DNA from: Oikopleura dioica
Lineage: Eukaryota > Animalia > Chordata
Direction of reading: 5' to 3'
Assembly (NCBI GenBank): GCA_907165135.1
Contig: OU015569.1
Coordinates: 9,610,001-9,674,000, forward strand
Length of the DNA: 64,000 bases
This document shows positions 340-25,806 of this stretch, in pieces. Position 1 is the stretch's first letter, and every line of letters begins with the position of its first letter. The notes under the pieces are model-generated. The model had not been told where the DNA came from, made no database searches, and worked only from the letters and a program-made list of their open reading frames with translations. A program made the translations under genes and the position numbers.

Positions 340-3263
340 ATGAACGGCCCGATTGACTACATCAGCGACGGACATGGACAGTTCTCATCTACCACCGCTA
401 GACATTCTAGCGTCCCGCACAAATCCAAAGGAACCAGTTCTTCTATAATCAGACATAGTCAGGGTGCGTTTAGTAATCTTTATTCGAAATAGTTAAAAGC
501 CCTTTCTTTCTCGAGATTTTTCTATCCTTCCGGCCTTATCGTTTGAAATAGCGAAGAGTAAGAAGGAGGTTAATTCAAAGATCGTCCCCAAATATTGTCT
601 TAGGATTATCTAATAGTTATTTATTAGTGGTAATGGCTGGACAATAGTATTCTTTTCTTTTATTGCTTTGTCTGGGGCAGTAAATCAGTTCCGTTAGCTT
701 ACATTCGTACATTTTTTTGTTAAATATAGACAGAGAAATGAGCACTGAAGGTAAAAAACTGGATGAAGGGAAAGGAGAAGGAAAGTCCCGGAAAGATGCG
801 AAGCCATGTCATGATGAGGCTCAGAAGATCATCGACTATCTCCAGAAGAAGTATAACTACCACCATTTGCCGTACGGATCGTCCGCCGACGATGGTCACC
901 AGACGATCTTGACAAAGTGCAAGAACTTGCAGAAAGAGATTCTCTCCGTCTGCAGAAGAATCAAGCGAGCGAATCGCTCTTCAAAGTCCTTGCTCGACGT
1001 GCTCAACAACGAGGACGAATCCATCTGCCTTGTTATCAAAAGGAACCAGGTAGGAAGCGCAACATAAACAGTGCTCACCAACAGCGGAAGCTGGCATAAT
1101 ATTACTGGCATAATATTACATGCACCGTCACGTATTCAACCCGTTAAAATCTCGTTTCATTTAGGATGGTAGAATTCAAGTCGATGGAAGAAAAGTCTGG
1201 CCCCATGCGTTTATGTTTCATCTTTACGCGCTCTTCATCAAGGTCCGGGTTTCAAAGTGTCAGCAGGTCACTTAGTATCTCTCATTCATGGGTGCTTGAG
1301 TTCGATGGAACCTGGAAAAGGGGGACAACACCCGTGAGCAATGTGGAAATCATTCTGAGTTGCGAACGAAGGAAAACTTGAAAACTCCATGCAGCTACCC
1401 TTTTGCGGCGGAATGGGCGAACGGAGAAAATCTGCTTTGCATCAACCCTTTCCATTACGAAGAAAAACTAAAGATTGAAGTAAACTCGCTGGTTAAGCGA
1501 ACACCACTCACGAAAGGTCCTCCTTCGCGGCCGTCAACAGCCTCGTCGGTGAGAACCGAAGCTTCAGGAAACTCTTTGATGATAGACTCTAATTGTCTTG
1601 AGAAGCTTTCGCTCTCCAAGAATCTGTGGGAAGTGCCTAACAGACGCGAGCGCAAATTCGGCGATGATGAGCTGAAGAACGCCAAGGGTATCATCAAATT
1701 CGAAGAGACAGTCTCGAAGGCACACGAGAAAAGAAACATGCACAACACGAGAAGCAGAAGTCCTAGGTAATTTTTATTATAACGTTCTATTTACTAAAAT
1801 GTACAGAATTTCATTAGCACTTTTTGTTATTGAGTAGGCAGAACTTGCTTAATATATAAACATATTGCTTTAATAAATGTTAGATGAGAATCAATTTTTG
1901 AAGAAGGTCTATAATTTTGTTGTAGACAATGTAACACAACCGGTCGTCAAGTTGCGTCAGATTTGCTAATAAACTATTGACTCAATAGCTACGAAAGCTT
2001 GCTTTATCAAAGAATTTAGACAGGGACGACGCAACCCAGCATGTGTGACTGATTGTGAGCTGATCAAGCTTTCTTTGCAGCCTGTAAACACGGTCAATGA
2101 AGTGAAAAGTCAGCTAGAAGACTTCTCTTTCATGGAAAACGCATTCAATGACGTCCAGGTTGGAGATGTCGGTGACGTAGCCGGGCTGCAACAGATAGAA
2201 GATCAGTTAGGGCTTCAGCCTACGAATGCAAACCAGAACGGTAGCCACGATAATTCGGAGTACTCAATGGTGACACACCCAATTGTGCTTCGCGAGGCAG
2301 CGGAGAAACCTTGGTGCAACGTTTCCGTGTACGAGTGCAACAACAAAATCGAGGTCTACTCAACGGCGAAGACTCAGCTCGGTGTCGAGTACAAGGCGGC
2401 CGATGTAAATAGATACGCCAAGAAGGAGACTCTCAAGGGCAAGGACGCTGCCCAAACGGATATTTTCGACTTGTCCAGCATCTCCAATGTAAATAGGTAA
2501 GAACATATTAGTTTCATTTATGTTTAACACATTCCACTCTAGAAGTACAGACACTTGGGACCTGTTGGAAAAGCTTCAACGAGGCTTGACACTTGTCTAT
2601 GACCGAGAGAAGCGCATCGTCAGTTGCCACAACAATTGCAAGAACCTGAAGATATACGTTCTCTCCTACCTTATGAATGTAGAATGTGGAAAACACGAGC
2701 AATCACTGATCCAAGTAGGCCCAGGTGCGTCTCGTGTCGTTTATGACGGCTACCAACTTGCGAAGACGATCGAAGGCGTCAACTCGACCACACAAAATGA
2801 TTTGCAAAAGTGGGCTCTCATCAGTCAATACGCGAATTACTTTACTGTTTTCCGCATATCTTTCCAACCATGGGGTCCGGAATACACGAAGAAGCGTCTT
2901 ACTGGTAAGCATCTTTTAGTACTTCATCTGAACTCTAGTTTAAGGATAAAATTAATTCACAACTTATTATTATTAGTCATAAGAATGAATTAAAAAATCT
3001 CTTTAGACTGCGATCTGTGGTTGGAAATATTCATGCGTGAATACCTTGACTGGATAAACCAGATCGAGCACCACTATGAATACGTCGTTCACGATGCCGC
3101 ATATGATTCTCCAGAAACGACCCCTCAATATGACCAGATTCAAAATTACGCGCCGGTACAATCACCCGACCCGACCCTACAGCCGGTGCAATCTCCCATG
3201 TCTCAACACCCTATGTCACCGTATAACATGGCCATGTCGCCTAACAACTTGCCTCTTCAGTGA
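340..3263 (+). CDS. Highly divergent SMAD-family protein (MH1 + linker + MH2) without a C-terminal SSXS; multi-exon
   Basis: Exon 1 runs from ATG340 to 463 and splices in frame to 730. MH1 motifs: ICLVIKRNQ|DGRIQVDGRKVWPH and GNHSELR..CSYPF..LCINPFHY (cf. [22 protein letters not shown] and VCINPYHY). MH2 motifs: PWCNVSVYE, LSSISNVNR, RISFQPWGPEY, WLEIFM..LDWI. Confidence 0.88.
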
Positions 3264-18939: not shown

Positions 18940-21900
18940 TTAGTCGGAGTTTGTTTTTGAAAGGGGTCCATTTCGGAATTGATTCACTGCGTATTCTTTC
19001 GGGCTCGAGACGACCTGTAGATATTCGAGGTTGTTCAAATTGCAATTCTTCTCGAGGCGGAATATATCCATTTCTGTGCCGTCACTTAGGCGAATTTTGA
19101 AAGTGTCGAAATTCAAAAGGCCTTCTTCCTCGTAATGCTTTTTCGGTACTTGATCTTCTTTCTTGACTTTCACTTTTTTGGCTGCCCTTTCTTTCTTTTC
19201 CTTCTCTTTCGTCGCTTCTTTCTCTTTAGCCCCTTCTCTGCCCCTTTTCGAATCTCTGCCAAAAACTTTCTTGCTCTTCCTTGGAAACTTATCCTTCCTC
19301 GCGTCAAATTCTTTATTTGCATCTTTACCATTCTTCGGTACCCAGCTTGGATCATTATCCGTCGTCGAGTCGGTTTCAGATGCGGGAGGAAATACTTCTT
19401 TTTTCGCGTGATTCCACTTATAGACAATGTAGACCTACAAACCAACAAATAAGATCTCAGAAAAATACTTTTTATCTTACGCTAGATAGGTGATCTGGAT
19501 TAGCGGTCATTGTGGCGGGATTAAAGAGAACTTGTTTGTCTTTGTGCATAATTTCTACCGTCCTCTTGAAGCGATCATGATGCGGCCCACCGCTGTAATG
19601 AAACAAAACACGCGCGGACTTCGAATCTGGAATCTTCATGAAGAGCACGGCCATCGGATCAAGTAGTATTTCACCGACCTAGATATAAGGTAATTCCAAG
19701 AAAGCGAGAAATAGTAGAATTACCTCCCGCGAAGAACCAGTGTAAAGTTTTTCGCTTAGCTCGAATCTGTTCTCGATGCTCAACGAAACATACACGCTTC
19801 TCCTGCCGTGATTTTTTAACCAGACGGAGTAGTTGAGCTCTATGCCGTCCCTCAGCTCTTTGAATTGATTCTCGTCGTTGGCAACACGCATGTTCAGCTC
19901 AAGATCGTAGTCGTCCTTTCTACTGATTTTCTTTAGGTACTGCGAAATTGTATTCATATTTTCTTTGTACGAGTGCGAGCAGTGTCGAGGCATGCGGCTC
20001 GGTCGAATACAGTATTCGTGTGACGGATCCTCTTTCGAACTCTTCAAGCAATACTTTCGTGCGTAGTCATCAAAATCTTTTTTCATCAGGTTGAACTTTG
20101 AACTGTAAGAGAACTTACTTAGGGATAAATAGAGAGTCACCATACTATGGTGTTCACAGTACGAGCAAAAATAAATGCCTTATTTGATCCCTCTCCTGAT
20201 CCTTGACTTTTTTACACGGATCATAGTTTTTTTCGTCGTCTTGGTTGCAGCTTGCAGGTTTGATCTTAATTCGTGAGAAGACTAGCGGGAACTCCTTGTC
20301 CTCCTTCCATTCCTCGGGGCTGGTTTTTTCTTTGGCCATTTTGAGATTGTCAGAAAGAATATCTCCTGACCATGGAAAGTAGCAATAGAAATTGGAATGG
20401 ATAAACGCTCTGCTCTCCATCGATTCAGTTTCGCTCTTTTTATCCGTAACTAAAAGCAAGCTTGCAGAAATTATAATTGATTTAAAAAGACATTATCATT
20501 CACATATCTTGAAAATGCGTACATACATCGAACGAATGAAATCACGCCCCATGTGGCCGCCTTGTTTAATGTTTGGTCGTTTGTTTCAATATCCTTTAAG
20601 TCTGGGCAATTAGGATCTTTATCTGCGGTTTTGTTGTCCATAAATACAGTGCAGTGGTTGGGGTTGATGCTGAATAAGTTTAAACACTGCGATGATTATT
20701 CTTCATTACCAGTAGCGCGCCATAGATTTTTCGTCGCATTTCGCCCATTTCTCATTGACCGTGTTCTTGACAACTTTCTCATCTTGGAGAATATCTGGGC
20801 GAAAGAACTGGACAATGGTTAGTCGAATTTCTGCAATGTGGATGTCTGCGTTTTTTCCTTTATGTGCGGGCGGAAATTTGATGTAGCAGCATTCACCGAA
20901 CATGCGCGAGCCGCGTTTGCACGAAGACAGGTTGATTTGGTAGAGAATGGACTCTTTAGCTAAAAGCTGCTTCCGGGAAATTGAAATCTGGTCCATCTTT
21001 GACTCTATCTCCGTCAGATTCTTCTCCTCTTCCTGGAGATTCATGTGACTGGCCACAGCGTCGACGAACGAATTAGCAGAAGAGTTTGGGCCACAGAGAA
21101 AGAGACTGTAAATAGTGCGGCCCCACTTGTCAAGATCCTTGTTGAAGTTCGCTCGCTTGAATTCCTTTGGATTCATTTTCTCGATTATCTTCGACAGATC
21201 ATGTTGAAATTGTTGTCGAGTGAGCTGAGGGTAGTAATGCAACGGATTGAAGCAAAAGTAGCTCTTCTTTCCCTTTTCGTCGTCATGTCCGTCGTCTTCG
21301 CAGTATCGCGAGAAAATTTGGCATGGTTTGGAGTAATCCGTCTCTTTCAAATACTGGACGAAAGGGTTGAAGAGAATGTAAATCATGTTCTGCGGGTAGA
21401 TTTTCTTTATCTAAAGTGGTGGAGTAAGTAAGTGAAATTGAAATAAATGCCACTCACTCTGTCATCTGTCGTCCAGTGCTGCACTTGGACCCTGCCATCG
21501 GCGGTGCGCGGCACTTTGATGCATCCCACTTCTCTCAACTCGCGCAGGATTTCCTCCTTATCGTCTTTCTTGGTAATATCGGTACATGCGTCGACGATAT
21601 CTTCGCAGAGCTTGAGAAACTTGCCAGATTCTCCGTCTCGGCCCGATTTCTGGTTGACGCGACGTGTATTATTTCGGAAGCTCCGTGCCAGCTCCCACAG
21701 CTGTCTGTCACAAAGCCTCTTTGAGTGGTTATAAATATCAGTTTTTGAAAATACCGTACTGCTTAAAATTTAGAACCGCGTGGCGAAAAGAAGTCGTGCT
21801 TGGGCATCTCCAGAGGGTGCATTTGCTTCGCTGCCGCGATAAATTTCGAGACAAATTCCTCCTCTCTCCGTTTTTCCTCAGTTTTGGTAATTTCAACTAA

Positions 21901-22511
21901 TTTAGCTATATTTTCCTTTTCGCTTGTGTCGATCGTGGTCTCCGTCTCGTCTTCCGGTTCTTCCTTCAATTCTTCAGTCTGCTTTCTCATTTCCTCCTCA
22001 AGTTCTGCATCTATCATCATGTTGTGGCGCACCGATTCACGGTTGAAATCGGTCAGCTGCAGCTGACTGTACTCGCTGGGACGGTAGTGGGGGAGAAAAG
22101 TCGGTTCATTCTTCACCACGTCGAAAATAGAAGAGTCTGAATGTTCAATCTTCAAGATCAAAAATGCTCAACTACCTGGGCTGTAAGAGGAGCTGTGAGT
22201 GGAACTCGTCAATGAGAGCTCTTGCATAGCCTGAACACCGATAGGCATCAGGCTGGAAGATAGAACGTCTCTTCTTTCATCTGACTCGGTTGTTGAAGTC
22301 TTCTTTAGCGGGTTGACTTTGTTATAAGATTCCGAGCCTCTAGAACCGTCTACTTCGGCGGTAACTCTTTTCGGCCGCCTATTATGGAGGATAACCCTAG
22401 AAAGCATCGTTTTCGAATACTGAGATGAGTGGTGGAAACTTACGGCTCCTGACCGCTCGCCACTACAGATCGCATGATCCCGGCTTTGTCTCTATTTTCA
22501 TCTGCGCCCAT
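18940..22511 (-). CDS. Large protein with tandem SMAD MH1-like domains, no MH2, and a K/E-rich C-terminus; 5' end uncertain
   Basis: The first MH1 reads GCIKVPRTADGRVQV..KKIYPQNMIYILF..YCEDD..FCFNPLHYY. A second degenerate copy reads CCYIKFP..QFFRPDIL..KCDEK..FSINPNHC. The coding frame ends ...SKTNSD* at 18940. Confidence 0.72.
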
Positions 22512-23342: not shown

Positions 23343-25806
23343 ATGGCGCCGCGGCCCCTCTCTCTTCTCAAGCTTCTTGCCTTTTTCGTCATCCTTTCTG
23401 TTCTCTACACAGGCTATATCTTCAAGGATGGTTTTATAAATCTGACAAATATCTATCCAAAAACTATCCGCTCCTCAGGCGGTCTTTTTCGACTCCAATC
23501 GCTCGAGCCAATCATCAAAAAAAGCAAAAGCTTAGTAAAAGAAGTCAACTAAGTGCCAATTATGTCCTAGAAATAGTTTTCGATCGCTTTTTTTATAAAA
23601 CTATCAACAGTCGCTTACTTTTCGAAGACGATCTTCTCTTTCCTACGACTCCAAGAACTTCTATCTCGGAGAAGAAGCGAGCCAACTTCTATCAGGCTCT
23701 GTTCACTACTTCAGAATTCCGAAGGAAAGGATCTCGATTAATGATTTTCGGCCTTCTTGATCAGTTTGTGATTCCCGATAAAGAAATACTGGCACGATCG
23801 ACTGGCGAAAGTGAAATCGGCGGGCCTAAACGGAGTGACAACGTATGTGCCCTGGAATCTGCATGAGCCGGAGCCTGGCGAGTTTCACTTCTCCGGCGAC
23901 TTGGACCTTGTTCACTTTATCAACGTAGCAAGAGCTCTTGATCTATTCGTGATTCTTAGGCCTGGGCCTTACATTTGCTCGGAGCTGGAGTGGGGAGGCC
24001 TCCCTGCATGGCTTCTCAGGGACTCATTTATGAAGGTGCGGACAAATTACCCGGGCTACATTAGCGCAGTCAAACGCTATTTCGCCGAGCTTCTCCCTCT
24101 TGTCAAATACCAGCAGTCCAAGTACGGTGGGCCGATCATAGCCGTGCAGGTCGAAAATGAATACGGACTGTACGCTGGCCAAGACCCCAACCACTTGAAT
24201 ACCCTTGCAGGACTTTTAAAAAACGAAGGCATCGTTGAGCCACTGTTCACCTCAGACGGGTCGAGTGTTTGGGAAAGCGAGAAGAGCACCATTTACGAAG
24301 ATGGACTGAAAAGTGTGAATTTCAAAAGCAACCCAGAAAAACACTTGAAATTATTGCGGGGGCATTTTCCAGATCAGCCACTCTGGGTGATGGAGTACTG
24401 GGCCGGTTGGTTCGACTGGTGGGGCGAAGGGCGCAATCTCTTCGACACGAGCGAATTCACAAGGAATCTCGATATCATATTAGACCAGAAGGCGTCCGTC
24501 AACTTTTACATGTTTCATGGTGGCACTAATTTTGGTTTCACTAATGGTGGTCTTACTATTGCCAGGTATTTGTATAGTTTAAAGTGTAAATTAAAGAGTT
24601 TATTCAGAGGGTATTACACAGCGGATGTGACGAGCTATGATTACGATTGCCCGATTTCAGAATCGGGGGCTTATGGAGAGAAATTTTACGCTATACGGGA
24701 GAGCTTAGTGTCACACGGATTTCCCGTGCCAGAAGTCTACCGCTCATCTATCACCAAGCCGAGAAGTTATAAACCACTGGAATACAAAGACGGATTTTTT
24801 AGTTTATGGGATATGCTTCACCTTGGTGCGTACAAATACATCAAACACTTAAAAACACTCAATTAGTTGAAAACGCAACTCTAAACGAGCCAATGCCGAT
24901 GGAAATAGTGAGCTATCCGAATGCGATCGGACAAAGTTATGGCTACATTTTCTACGAAATGAACGTTGATTGTGCGAAGAGTGGCGATGTTGTCGTATCT
25001 GGGCTGAAAACAAGACTGCGAGGACGAGCTCATTTCTATCTCAACAGGAATGAGGTTGGGAAGCCTATTCTTTACGAAGACGAAGGAAAGGTTAAATATC
25101 TGCCAATATGGAGCATAAAACTTAAAAAATATGCTCTGGATTATATTTAACCGGAGCTAGCCTCAACGCAGCAAGATAGCTCCTCGTGGGAGGTTATTCA
25201 TTCGTCAGAAATGTCCTTCGATCTTGGAATCTTAGTCGAGAACCCAGGCCGCGTCAACTTCGACAATATCTACGGCTTAGATGGGCAATACAAGGGGTTG
25301 CTAGGAAATATCGTTCTTTCGGGCTCTGCTGGTTGTAAATTCAAAGGGCAAGGCGTATCCGCTTTTCGCTTGGATATGAACTCAACAACGATAGCACAAT
25401 CAACAAGGAGAACGGGGCGCTGGCGAGAACGGCCCGGCTTGCACAAATTTACACTTCATCTCCGACACGAGGCACACGATACTTTCGTCGATCCAGTATC
25501 TTCGGGCTTTAGAAAAGGAGTCGTTTTCGTGAATGAGCGCAACTTGGGGCGCTATTGGGAAATTGGCCCACAGAAGGTAACATTTACCTTTCAATTACCA
25601 TTTTCAAAGCTCTAATGAGCTCAAATGAGCCTCGCTAGTATAAACTGACATGAAATCTTTAGACGTTGTATTTGCCAGGTCCATGGCTTCGCTCCGGCGC
25701 TAACGAGATTATTGTCTTTGATGAGTATCCTCAGCAAGAAGCTCCAAAAGTGTTGATCTTTAAAGATGCCCCTGATCTTGGCGTCAAAAATGACAGAGAC
25801 CCCTAA
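23343..25806 (+). CDS. Beta-galactosidase, glycoside hydrolase family 35 (GLB1/GLB1L-like), with an N-terminal signal/anchor
   Basis: SGSVHYFRIP, TYVPWNLHEPEPGEF, LRPGPYICSELEWGGLPAWL, GGPIIAVQVENEYG, MEYWAGWFDWWG, NFYMFHGGTNFG, TSYDYDCP, LVENPGRVNF, KGVVFVNERNLGRYWEIGPQ. Confidence 0.95.

What the first reader, a model, noticed from the sequence alone, without database searches (positions are those of the whole stretch)
18940..22511. Tandem multi-MH1 protein: SMAD DNA-binding domains repeated without MH2
Seen: MH1 copy 1 keeps all four expected Zn ligands (C in CIKVPRTADGRVQV, C in YCEDD, C and H in FCFNPLHY) and has an inserted hairpin (VQVQHWTTDD..KKIYP). Copy 2 follows directly (CCYIKFP..QFFRPDIL..KCDEK..SINPNHC). 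Two weaker candidates lie further on (KYCLKS..EYCIRPSRM; ..TANPDHL), then an NLS-like K/E-rich tail, with no MH2 motifs. Known: MH1 normally occurs once per protein (SMADs; the related CTF/NFI domain) and SMADs gain DNA avidity by MH2-mediated trimerisation. Inference: a signal-independent single-chain multivalent MH1 factor. Together with the SSXS-less SMAD 16 kb away it suggests a lineage-specific radiation of SMAD-derived regulators uncoupled from TGF-beta receptors.
Basis: partly seen in the sequence, partly recalled or inferred. Interest (0 to 1): 0.8.

Follow-up and report, generated by a model that had tools for sequence, protein, structure and literature searches.

The report
Divergent MH1 protein without recognisable MH2
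An expressed gene of the planktonic tunicate Oikopleura dioica encodes a ~1,020-residue protein with one demonstrable, very divergent SMAD-type MH1 DNA-binding domain, a second zinc-type module that keeps only MH1's signature motifs, and no detectable MH2, so "four tandem MH1 domains" is not supported.

Summary
It has ten exons on the minus strand, from the ATG at 22511 to the stop at 18940-18942. It is the orthologue of the uncharacterised Oikopleura dioica protein E4XBK7 and is transcribed in marine metatranscriptomes.

- **Copy 1 is an MH1 domain.** Profile-profile comparison with a SMAD MH1 alignment gives 84-92% probability (P 5e-7 to 7e-6) over the whole domain. Reversed and shuffled controls fail. 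All four zinc ligands and the hairpin Arg and Gln are kept, and the hairpin tip carries a 7-9 residue insertion. Pfam MH1 is the only hit but stays below its cut-off (17.7 vs 25 bits).
- **Copy 2 is unproven.** It keeps only signature motifs: CC, then F-F-R-P-D-L, then KW..C, then C-x-N-P-x-H-C. These are conserved in both paralogues and in all lineages found. No test reaches significance (P about 0.1-0.2).
- **Copies 3 and 4 are not supported.** The "CLNPNR" motif of copy 3 is not even conserved.
- **No MH2 is demonstrable.** Two weak collinear matches (P 0.02 and 0.13) do not survive fair controls.
- **Both AlphaFold runs failed** (pLDDT 39 and 49), so the folds could not be counted.

A second paralogue lies 2.6 Mb away on the same contig, and related genes occur in other marine metagenome contigs. 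My verdict: a lineage-specific protein family with an MH1 domain and no recognisable MH2. This is a new variant of a known kind, and the multi-MH1 claim remains unproven.

The parts
18940..22511 (-). Whole coding region of the gene: ATG at 22511, stop at 18940-18942, ten exons, about 1,020 codons. It is the orthologue of O. dioica E4XBK7 / CBY08982.1.
   Evidence: tblastn of P0006 is colinear over its whole length.
22444..22511 (-). Exon 1, followed by a 47-nt GT-AG intron (22397-22443).
22176..22396 (-). Exon 2, followed by a 39-nt GT-AG intron (22137-22175).
21775..22136 (-). Exon 3, an acidic and probably disordered N-terminal region. Its 3' end (donor) is unresolved: no in-phase GT exists here, and the related cDNA L048 joins ..HDLFY|RLCDRQ.. 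at a non-GT donor.
21458..21718 (-). Exon 4: the MH1 N-terminal helices, the first zinc Cys (G-C-I-K-V-P-R) and the first hairpin strand (D-G-R-V-Q-V). The exon could end at 21452 if the donor used in the Bergen-type cDNA applies here.
21411..21457 (-). Predicted 47-nt intron (GTGAGT..TTTAG) inside the MH1 beta-hairpin. Its 42-nt counterpart is wrongly kept as coding sequence in the database model P0006.
   Evidence: There is no RNA evidence for this junction in the window's own lineage.
20710..21410 (-). Exon 5: the rest of MH1 (zinc Cys in Y-C-E-D-D; Cys and His in C-F-N-P-L-H), a helical linker, and most of module D2.
21222..21637 (-). D1, the demonstrable divergent MH1 domain (this span includes the hairpin intron).
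   Evidence: hhalign against the SMAD MH1 profile gives 84-92% probability and P 5e-7 to 7e-6 over 103-111 columns, while the reversed control gives P 0.53. In the column-shuffle test the real score is 32.7 and the null is 3.0 +/- 2.3. Pfam MH1 is the only hit: E 0.0043-0.031 on A-type pieces and 0.058-0.11 on B-type exons, all below the cut-off.
20642..21146 (-). D2, a Cys/His module with MH1-like signature motifs: E-K-W helix, G-x-C-C, F-F-R-P-D-[IL], K-W-A-K-C, C-I-N-P-N-H-C. It is a possible decayed second MH1. The core is 20642-20897.
   Evidence: The motifs are conserved in A- and B-type genes. Statistics are not significant: hhalign matches only the CxNPxH columns at P 0.07-0.11, hmmsearch shuffles reach the real score in 61/500, and block shuffles in 22/120.
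20670..20709 (-). 40-nt GT-AG intron that splits the Cys codon of C-x-N-P-x-H. The position and phase are the same in the metagenome loci L042 and L046.
20527..20669 (-). Exon 6.
20196..20449 (-). Exon 7, followed by a non-canonical GA-AG intron (20114-20195).
   Evidence: The loose end of an RNA contig joins ..AAGGATCAG to TTCTCT...
19724..20113 (-).
   Evidence: RNA contigs cover it.
19481..19678 (-). It is preceded by a 45-nt GT-AG intron (19679-19723) seen in RNA.
   Evidence: The joint is, checked.
19396..20557 (-). D3, about 320 residues of unassigned fold, starting at W-G-V-I-S-F-V-R. It has no demonstrable MH1 or MH2.
19132..19395 (-). K/E/R-rich low-complexity tract, NLS-like.
   Evidence: Read directly from the sequence. 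An RNA contig covers 19217-19426.
18943..19131 (-). Conserved C-terminal domain of about 63 residues with no family match.
   Evidence: Conserved between the Okinawa-type window and the Bergen-type P0006. It has no Pfam hit.

Best explanation
This is an expressed, fast-evolving gene specific to appendicularians. It has two paralogues in this Oikopleura dioica genome. The protein has six parts, in order:

1. An acidic N-terminal region.
2. One genuine but very divergent SMAD-type MH1 domain (D1). It keeps all four zinc ligands and the hairpin Arg and Gln that contact DNA in SMAD3, and its hairpin tip is 7-9 residues longer.
3. A helical linker and a second Cys/His module (D2). D2 retains the most conserved MH1 motifs, (W/F)-R-x-P-D-L and C-x-N-P-x-H, in the right order and with similar spacing. 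It is probably, but not demonstrably, a decayed duplicate MH1 whose hairpin has been rewritten.
4. About 320 residues of unknown fold (D3).
5. A K/E-rich NLS-like tract.
6. A small conserved C-terminal domain.

The most likely mechanism is inferred, not shown. The protein would be a nuclear DNA-binding regulator that reads short SMAD-box-like sites through D1. It would act independently of TGF-beta/BMP receptors, because it has no MH2, no L3 loop and no SSXS tail to be phosphorylated or to trimerise. D2 would serve as a structural, protein-binding or second low-specificity nucleic-acid module.

Sub-confidences: real and expressed gene 0.95; D1 is MH1 0.9; D2 is MH1-derived about 0.5; D3 is not an MH2 about 0.7.
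For: - **Gene and orthology:**
- **Transcription and splicing:** RNA contigs at 99%+ identity show one GT-AG and one GA-AG intron. The spliced cDNA-type contig L048 carries a 628-codon ORF. The ORFs P0011 and P0013 are spliced.
- **D1 is MH1:** hhalign gives 84.4%, 90.9% and 92.3% probability with P 7e-6, 1.2e-6 and 5.4e-7, full length. Reversed controls give P 0.53. The column-shuffle null is 3.0 +/- 2.3 against 32.7, and 0/60 shuffles reach it. The block-shuffle test gives 0/40. MH1 is the only Pfam hit on independent halves of the domain in A-type and B-type genes.
- **Zinc ligands and hairpin:** the zinc ligands and D-G-R-x-Q align to SMAD C64/C109/C121/H126 and R74/Q76. The alignment is; the residue roles are from my knowledge of the SMAD3-DNA structure.
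- **D2 motifs:** they are conserved across A-type sequences (window, P0006/L047, L048, P0002) and B-type sequences (L052, L042, L046, P0140). The intron that splits the Cys codon is also conserved in the window, L042 and L046.
- **No MH2:** Pfam finds nothing, the six-frame MH2 scan has no hit inside the gene, and hmmsearch gives -0.7 bits.
Against: - D1 is below Pfam's curated MH1 cut-off: 17.7 bits against 25.
- phmmer against 1.84 billion representatives and against the PDB finds no SMAD.
- D2 fails every statistical test. Its hairpin region is unconserved and 8-10 residues shorter in B-type genes.
- D1 and D2 do not align to each other beyond CxNPxH.
- Both AlphaFold2 models are unusable (pLDDT 39.1 and 49.1), so no fold was verified.
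- D3 gives two weak collinear matches to MH2 (P 0.021 and 0.13). A decayed MH2 therefore cannot be excluded.
- DNA binding, nuclear localisation and receptor independence are untested.
Confidence: 0.6

Rival explanations
1. One reading: a single chain carrying three or four tandem MH1 domains that bind DNA multivalently.
For: NP-x-H-like strings recur four times. By eye, the copy 4 segment (I-K-I-P-D-S..R-V-L-F..G-G-P-L-H) resembles the MH1 hairpin.
Against: D3, which holds copies 3 and 4, gives P 0.17-0.21 against MH1 and P 0.21-0.34 against D1 and D2. The copy 3 motif C-L-N-P-N-R becomes C-I-R-P-S-R in the window and C-I-A-R-S-R in paralogue B. Copy 4 has no Cys ligands. The same copy 4 segment matches MH2 by eye and the Rab27A P-loop region by HMMER about equally weakly (E 0.22), which shows these resemblances are unreliable.
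Confidence: 0.05
2. An extremely divergent SMAD of canonical architecture. D1 is the MH1, D2 lies in an expanded linker, and D3 is a decayed MH2 with large insertions.
For: hhalign of D3 against an MH2 profile enriched with O. dioica MH2 exons gives two collinear local matches. W-C-V-I-S-F aligns to the MH2 start W-C-S-I-[AS]-Y (P 0.13-0.2), and G-V-E-L-N-Y..V..Y-V aligns to G-x-G-V-x-L-Y-Y..V..I-F-V (P 0.021). Both motifs are conserved in paralogue B.
Against: Reversed-profile decoys score 38-42 against 45 for the real pair. Block shuffles reach the real score in 8/90 trials. hmmsearch gives -0.7 bits, with 67/500 shuffles at or above it. Pfam MH2 finds nothing. There is no L3-loop or SSXS motif, and the protein ends ..S-K-T-N-S-D.
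Confidence: 0.22
3. The MH1 resemblance of D1 is spurious, and the protein is an unrelated lineage-specific Cys-rich protein.
For: Every Pfam score is below the gathering cut-off. No SMAD was recovered by phmmer.
Against: The profile-profile match covers the full domain, keeps all four zinc ligands in register, and fails in reversed and shuffled controls. MH1 is the sole Pfam hit on different halves of the domain in different paralogues.
Confidence: 0.06
4. A decaying pseudogene or an annotation artefact made of unrelated exons.
For: The sequence diverges fast: 40-65% identity between O. dioica lineages. One exon junction has no canonical donor.
Against: The reading frame is intact across ten exons in several lineages. 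Spliced transcripts exist. Motifs and intron positions are conserved between paralogues and across lineages.
Confidence: 0.03

Closest known systems
SMAD transcription factors (R-, Co- and I-SMADs; MH1 plus linker plus MH2)
   Same: D1 aligns over the full MH1 domain. It keeps the four zinc ligands, the D-G-R-x-Q hairpin strand and the C-x-N-P-x-H-Y knuckle.
   Different: There is no demonstrable MH2, L3 loop or SSXS tail. The hairpin tip is 7-9 residues longer. The W-R-W-P-D-L motif is changed to L-F-N-P-[FY] in D1. A second Cys/His module and about 500 further residues follow. Total length is about 1,020 aa, against 400-550 for SMADs.
NFI/CTF family (MH1-like DNA-binding domain without MH2)
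   Same: It is precedent for an MH1-type zinc DNA-binding domain working outside the receptor-SMAD pathway.
   Different: No CTF_NFI or NFI pre-N domain was found by Pfam. D1 resembles SMAD MH1, not NFI, in its hairpin and knuckle motifs. NFI dimerises through its DNA-binding domain, and nothing is known here.
Truncated or atypical SMAD-like proteins (for example C. elegans DAF-14 and Drosophila Expansion, which have MH2 only; from my own knowledge)
   Same: They are lineage-specific SMAD derivatives that keep only one of the two domains.
   Different: Those proteins keep MH2 and lose MH1. This family does the reverse.
E4XBK7_OIKDI / CBY08982.1 (unnamed protein product, O. dioica Bergen)
   Same: It is the direct orthologue and is colinear over the whole length.
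   Different: Identity is 40-65%. The database model keeps a 42-nt in-frame intron inside the MH1 hairpin and mis-joins exons 3 and 4, as the cDNA-type contig L048 shows. The collection records no name for it beyond 'unnamed/uncharacterized protein', and Pfam finds no domain on it.

Membership tests
MH1 domain (Pfam PF03165) | Score at or above the curated gathering cut-off (25 bits). | tested here: not met
   The best scores are 17.7 bits (E 0.0043) on the spliced D1 of L048, 17.0 on P0003, and 14.0 and 13.1 on B-type exons. MH1 is nevertheless the only family hit.
MH1 domain (Pfam PF03165) | Full-length profile-profile similarity to SMAD MH1. | tested here: met
   For D1, hhalign gives 84-92% probability and P 5e-7 to 7e-6 over 103-111 columns. 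Reversed and shuffled controls are negative.
MH1 domain (Pfam PF03165) | Cys3-His zinc site (SMAD3 C64, C109, C121, H126). | tested here: met
   For D1, all four ligands are in register in the hhalign alignment. D2 also has candidate ligands (CC, KW..C, C-x-N-P-x-H) conserved in all lineages, but without a significant alignment.
MH1 domain (Pfam PF03165) | The MH1 three-dimensional fold. | tested here: inconclusive
   The AlphaFold2 models of D1+D2 and of D2 alone had mean pLDDT 39.1 and 49.1. The ESM Atlas model has pLDDT 0.30. No fold search was meaningful.
   hhalign matches only the six C-x-N-P-x-H columns, at P 0.07-0.11 against MH1 and P 0.15 against D1. hmmsearch gives 0.8 bits, with 61/500 shuffles at or above it. 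Block shuffles reach the real score in 22/120 trials. Pfam finds nothing.
SMAD family | MH2 domain (PF03166). | tested here: not met
   There is no Pfam hit on P0006, L048 or the exons. The six-frame genome scan finds no hit in 18940-22511. The hhalign local matches (P 0.02 and 0.13) do not survive reversed and block-shuffle controls.
SMAD family (receptor-regulated) | C-terminal SSXS phosphorylation motif. | tested here: not met
   The protein ends ..L-S-K-T-N-S-D and its orthologue ends ..S-K-T-N-S-N.
SMAD family | Beta-hairpin residues that contact DNA (R74, Q76, K81 of SMAD3). | tested here: inconclusive
   In D1, the Arg and Gln of D-G-R-[VI]-Q are kept in A- and B-type genes. A Lys follows the 7-9 residue insertion. 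DNA binding was not tested.
NFI/CTF | CTF_NFI C-terminal domain and NFI pre-N DNA-binding segment. | tested here: not met
   Neither appears in Pfam scans at E up to 10.

The most novel reading that the evidence does not exclude
D2 is a true second MH1 fold. The family would then be a single-chain, two-headed MH1 factor that arose in appendicularians by internal duplication of a SMAD DNA-binding domain and loss or decay of MH2. It would be a receptor-independent way to obtain the DNA avidity that SMADs normally get by MH2 trimerisation.
Probability: 0.3. Interest if true: 0.7.

Novelty: new variant of a known kind. Interest (0 to 1): 0.45.

Why it matters
MH1 domains are otherwise known almost only in SMADs, where they are coupled to MH2 and to receptor signalling, and in NFI factors. 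A chordate lineage that keeps an MH1 with an intact zinc site and DNA-contact residues in a large protein lacking any recognisable MH2, in two paralogues, would show how a signalling-pathway DNA-binding domain can be recruited into a signal-independent regulator. It also fits the many divergent SMAD-like loci the genome scans found in Oikopleura. On the practical side, it corrects the public gene model (a retained intron inside the hairpin and a wrong exon 3/4 join). It also assigns a first domain to a protein that carries no name beyond 'unnamed/uncharacterized' in the sources seen here.

Tried and rejected
1. **Pfam on single exons** gave nothing at first. The six-frame MH1 and MH2 scans of the genome missed this gene.
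2. **phmmer of the orthologue core** against the PDB and against 1.84 billion representatives returned only Oikopleura-type fragments and no SMAD.
3. **Family profiles against PDB sequences** gave nothing for D1+D2. D2 gave a chance-level AWP3b hit (E 0.52). The copy 4 segment gave a Rab27A P-loop-region hit at E 0.22, which I judged to be chance.
4. **ESM Atlas** gave no usable feature hit, and its own model has pLDDT 0.30.
5. **AlphaFold2, run twice,** gave pLDDT 39 and 49. I ran no fold search because low-confidence models give meaningless matches.
6. **Null models.** Relaxed-gap global hhalign looked very significant for D3 against MH2 when compared with column or block shuffles under -M 50. 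I rejected this as an artefact: shuffling alignments made of fragment rows reduces the number of match columns. With -M first and with reversed decoys the signal disappears.
7. **Species-labelled RNA-seq runs** (X6-X8) gave almost no reads on the gene at 90% likeness. This probably reflects another lineage or low expression.
8. **The operon idea was rejected.** The cDNA-type contig L048 carries the neighbouring gene head-to-head, as in the window.
9. **Literature searches** found no paper on Oikopleura SMADs or on tandem MH1 in one chain.
10. The window's exons were never joined into one protein. All searches were made exon by exon, by reference. The database orthologue P0006 and the ORF of contig L048 served as the contiguous references.
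11. **Operators' limits.** Read laying was given 4,401 letters.
Full report
**Organism and locus**

The window is G000:C2:9610001-9674000 of a 64.3-Mb, 19-contig assembly. The largest exon finds public proteins whose cluster includes CBY08982.1 = E4XBK7_OIKDI, an "unnamed protein product [Oikopleura dioica]" of 967 aa (P0006). tblastn of P0006 against the window is colinear from 22511 to 18943 on the minus strand at 40-65% identity. The genome is an O. dioica lineage far from the Bergen reference.

**Gene model**

Ten exons were placed from reading frames, splice motifs and orthologue alignment.

| Exon | Window coordinates (minus strand) |
|---|---|
| 1 | 22511-22444 |
| 2 | 22396-22176 |
| 3 | 22136 to about 21775 |
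| 4 | 21718-21458 |
| 5 | 21410-20710 |
| 6 | 20669-20527 |
| 7 | 20449-20196 |
| 8 | 20113-19724 |
| 9 | 19678-19481 |
| 10 | 19434-18940 |

- RNA evidence comes from a marine metatranscriptome (run X1, contigs at 99% identity or more). It covers 19217-19426 and 19605-20115. It shows the 45-nt GT-AG intron 19679-19723. Through a loose end, it also shows a non-canonical GA-AG intron at 20114-20195.
- The JGI contig L048 carries an uninterrupted 628-codon ORF, 84% identical to P0006, that lacks all introns. It shows that P0006 wrongly keeps a 42-nt in-frame intron inside the MH1 hairpin and mis-joins exons 3 and 4.
- In the window, the hairpin intron is predicted as 47 nt (GTGAGT..TTTAG, 21457-21411). 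The exon 3 donor remains unresolved.
- The three species-labelled RNA-seq runs gave almost no reads.
Searches were made exon by exon, by reference, and P0006 and L048 served as contiguous references.

**Copy 1 (D1) is an MH1 domain**

- Pfam gives MH1 as the only hit on A-type sequences. E is 0.0043 (17.7 bits) on the spliced D1 of L048, with profile positions 33-64 matched. E is 0.0068-0.031 on P0003 and P0006.
- On B-type exons the other end of the profile (76-103) is hit, at E 0.058 and 0.11. All of these scores are below the 25-bit cut-off.
- I built a SMAD2/3 alignment from 24 animal proteins and later added 13 O. dioica MH1 exons. I compared it with an exon-wise family alignment. hhalign gives 84.4%, 90.9% and 92.3% probability (P 7e-6, 1.2e-6, 5.4e-7) over 103-111 columns spanning the whole domain.
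- Controls fail. The reversed profile gives P 0.53. In the column-shuffle test the real score is 32.7 and the null is 3.0 +/- 2.3, with 0/60 shuffles reaching it. In the block-shuffle test the real score is 70 and the null is 38.9 +/- 7.4, with 0/40 reaching it.
- In the alignment, the Cys of G-C-I-K-V-P-R, the Cys of Y-C-E-D-D, and the Cys and His of C-F-N-P-L-H fall on the four zinc ligands. D-G-R-V-Q falls on the hairpin strand that carries SMAD3 R74 and Q76 (the roles of these residues are from my own knowledge). The hairpin tip is 7-9 residues longer than in SMADs.

**Copy 2 (D2) resembles MH1 only at the motif level**

The 40-nt intron 20709-20670 splits a Cys codon (TG|C), so the protein reads ..A-R-Y-C-I-N-P-N-H-C...
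- The same intron position and phase occur in the metagenome loci L042 and L046.
- Across four A-type sequences and four B-type sequences, five motifs are conserved in D2:
  - F-x-C-G-P-[ND]-S..F-[LIV]
  - G-x-C-C
  - [FY]-[FVI]-R-P-[DE]-L
  - K-W..C
  - C-[CIV]-N-P-[DNH]-H-C
- Their order and spacing resemble MH1's C64, W-R-W-P-D-L, C109 and C-x-N-P-Y-H.
- No test reaches significance:
  - hhalign aligns only the six C-x-N-P-x-H columns, at P 0.07-0.11 against MH1 and P 0.15 against D1.
  - hmmsearch gives 0.8 bits, with 61/500 shuffles at or above it.
  - Relaxed-gap global alignment gives 32.0 against a block-shuffle null of 26.6 +/- 5.5, with 22/120 at or above it.
  - Pfam finds nothing.
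- The hairpin region of D2 is unconserved and 8-10 residues shorter in B-type genes.
- I rate "D2 derives from MH1" at about 0.5.

**Copies 3 and 4, and the MH2 question (D3)**

- D3 shows nothing against MH1, D1 or D2 (P 0.17-0.34).
- The copy 3 motif is not conserved. It is C-L-N-P-N-R in Bergen, C-I-R-P-S-R in the window and C-I-A-R-S-R in paralogue B.
- Copy 4 has no Cys ligands. Its segment can be matched about equally weakly to the MH1 hairpin by eye, to the C-K-I-P-P-G-C strand of MH2 by eye, and to the Rab27A P-loop region (E 0.22).
- I tested whether D3 is a decayed MH2. hhalign finds W-C-V-I-S-F at the MH2 start (P 0.13-0.2). With O. dioica MH2 exons added to the profile, it also finds G-V-E-L-N-Y..Y-V against G-x-G-V-x-L-Y-Y..I-F-V (P 0.021). 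The two matches are collinear.
- Early shuffle nulls made this look strong. They were biased, because shuffling alignments made of fragment rows loses match columns. With -M first, 8/90 block shuffles reach the real score. Reversed decoys score 38-42 against 45 for the real pair.
- MH2 is therefore neither demonstrated nor excluded. I give it about 0.2-0.3.

**Structure prediction**

Two AlphaFold2 jobs were run, one on D1+D2 with 10 alignment rows and one on D2 with 14 rows. They gave mean pLDDT 39.1 and 49.1. The ESM Atlas model of E4XBK7 has pLDDT 0.30.

**Family distribution**

- phmmer of the orthologue core against 1.84 billion representative proteins found 7 hits, all Oikopleura-type fragments, including the divergent P0018.
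- A profile scan of this genome found one paralogue at C2:12252741-12253124 on the minus strand (E 1.4e-17; L052/L054). It has the same D1, D2 and W-C-x-[IL]-S-F-I-R organisation and an E-L-E-Y-S-I-Y-V..Y-V-S-L exon.
- B-type relatives occur on TARA and JGI metagenome contigs (L042, L046, P0140).
- The genome also holds about 9 strong MH1 loci and about 13 MH2 loci, including an MH2 at window 2538-2903.
- No paper in the held library deals with Oikopleura SMADs or with tandem MH1 in one polypeptide.

**Conclusion**

The finding is a real, expressed, lineage-specific family of proteins with an MH1 domain and no recognisable MH2. One MH1 is shown, a second is possible, and four are not supported. 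The proposed function, a receptor-independent DNA-binding regulator acting through D1, is inferred from domain content only.

Noticed in passing
G000:C2:12252741-12253124 (-) ; L052:541-2587, L054:6122-9330: A paralogue (B-type) of the gene lies 2.6 Mb away on the same contig. It has the same order: MH1, Cys/His module, then W-C-H-L-S-F-I-R. Its MH1 knuckle reads C-V-N-A-L-H-Y (NP changed to NA). In D2 the intron sits in the F-V-R-P-E-L region instead of the Cys codon.
   Followed up: partly
window 20114-20195 (-): A non-canonical GA-AG intron of 82 nt, supported by a metatranscriptome contig whose loose end matches the upstream exon end.
   Followed up: yes
window about 21719-21790 (-) ; L047:1993-2065: The exon 3/4 intron has no in-phase GT donor. 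Comparing the cDNA-type L048 with the genomic L047 places the donor at ..TAT|CCACTC.., which is an unusual donor, although the two loci come from different lineages.
   Followed up: partly
L048:141-2120 (-) and window 23343-25806 (+): The metatranscriptome-type contig L048 carries two intron-free genes head-to-head: the MH1 gene and a 660-codon gene that starts M-A-P-R-P-L-S.. with a signal- or TM-like N-terminus. The arrangement is the same as in the window. This suggests overlapping divergent 5' UTRs or a bidirectional promoter, not an operon.
   Followed up: partly
L046:1892-1894: An in-frame TGA interrupts the otherwise conserved B-type MH1/linker exon of this metagenome contig. It could be a pseudogene copy, a polymorphism or an assembly error.
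   Followed up: no
L052:2192-2587 (-) vs window 19481-19678 (-): The N-terminal exon of paralogue B contains D-S-E-R-V-L-F-Q-C-G-E-N-Q-F-H-E. This is 9/19 identical to the D3 segment P-D-S-K-S-E-R-V-L-F-H-Y-S-G-G-P-L-H-E of the A-type protein, but it sits at the other end of the protein. It may be chance or a shuffled motif.
   Followed up: no
G000:C1:593955-594161 (-) (L001): This is the best MH1 hit in the genome (63.8 bits), and no MH2 hit is listed nearby. It could be another MH1-only gene, or a SMAD whose MH2 was missed.
   Followed up: no
G000:C4:14232476-14235252 (-) (L020, L029, L031, L034): Two sets of MH2 matches about 2 kb apart suggest tandem MH2-bearing genes, or one gene with two MH2 domains.
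   Followed up: no
window 18943-19131 (-): A conserved C-terminal domain of about 63 residues (..G-L-L-N-F-D-T-F-K-I-R-L..L-E-Y-L-Q-V-V-S-S-P-K-E-Y-A-V-N-Q-F..) follows the K/E-rich tract and matches no family.
   Followed up: partly
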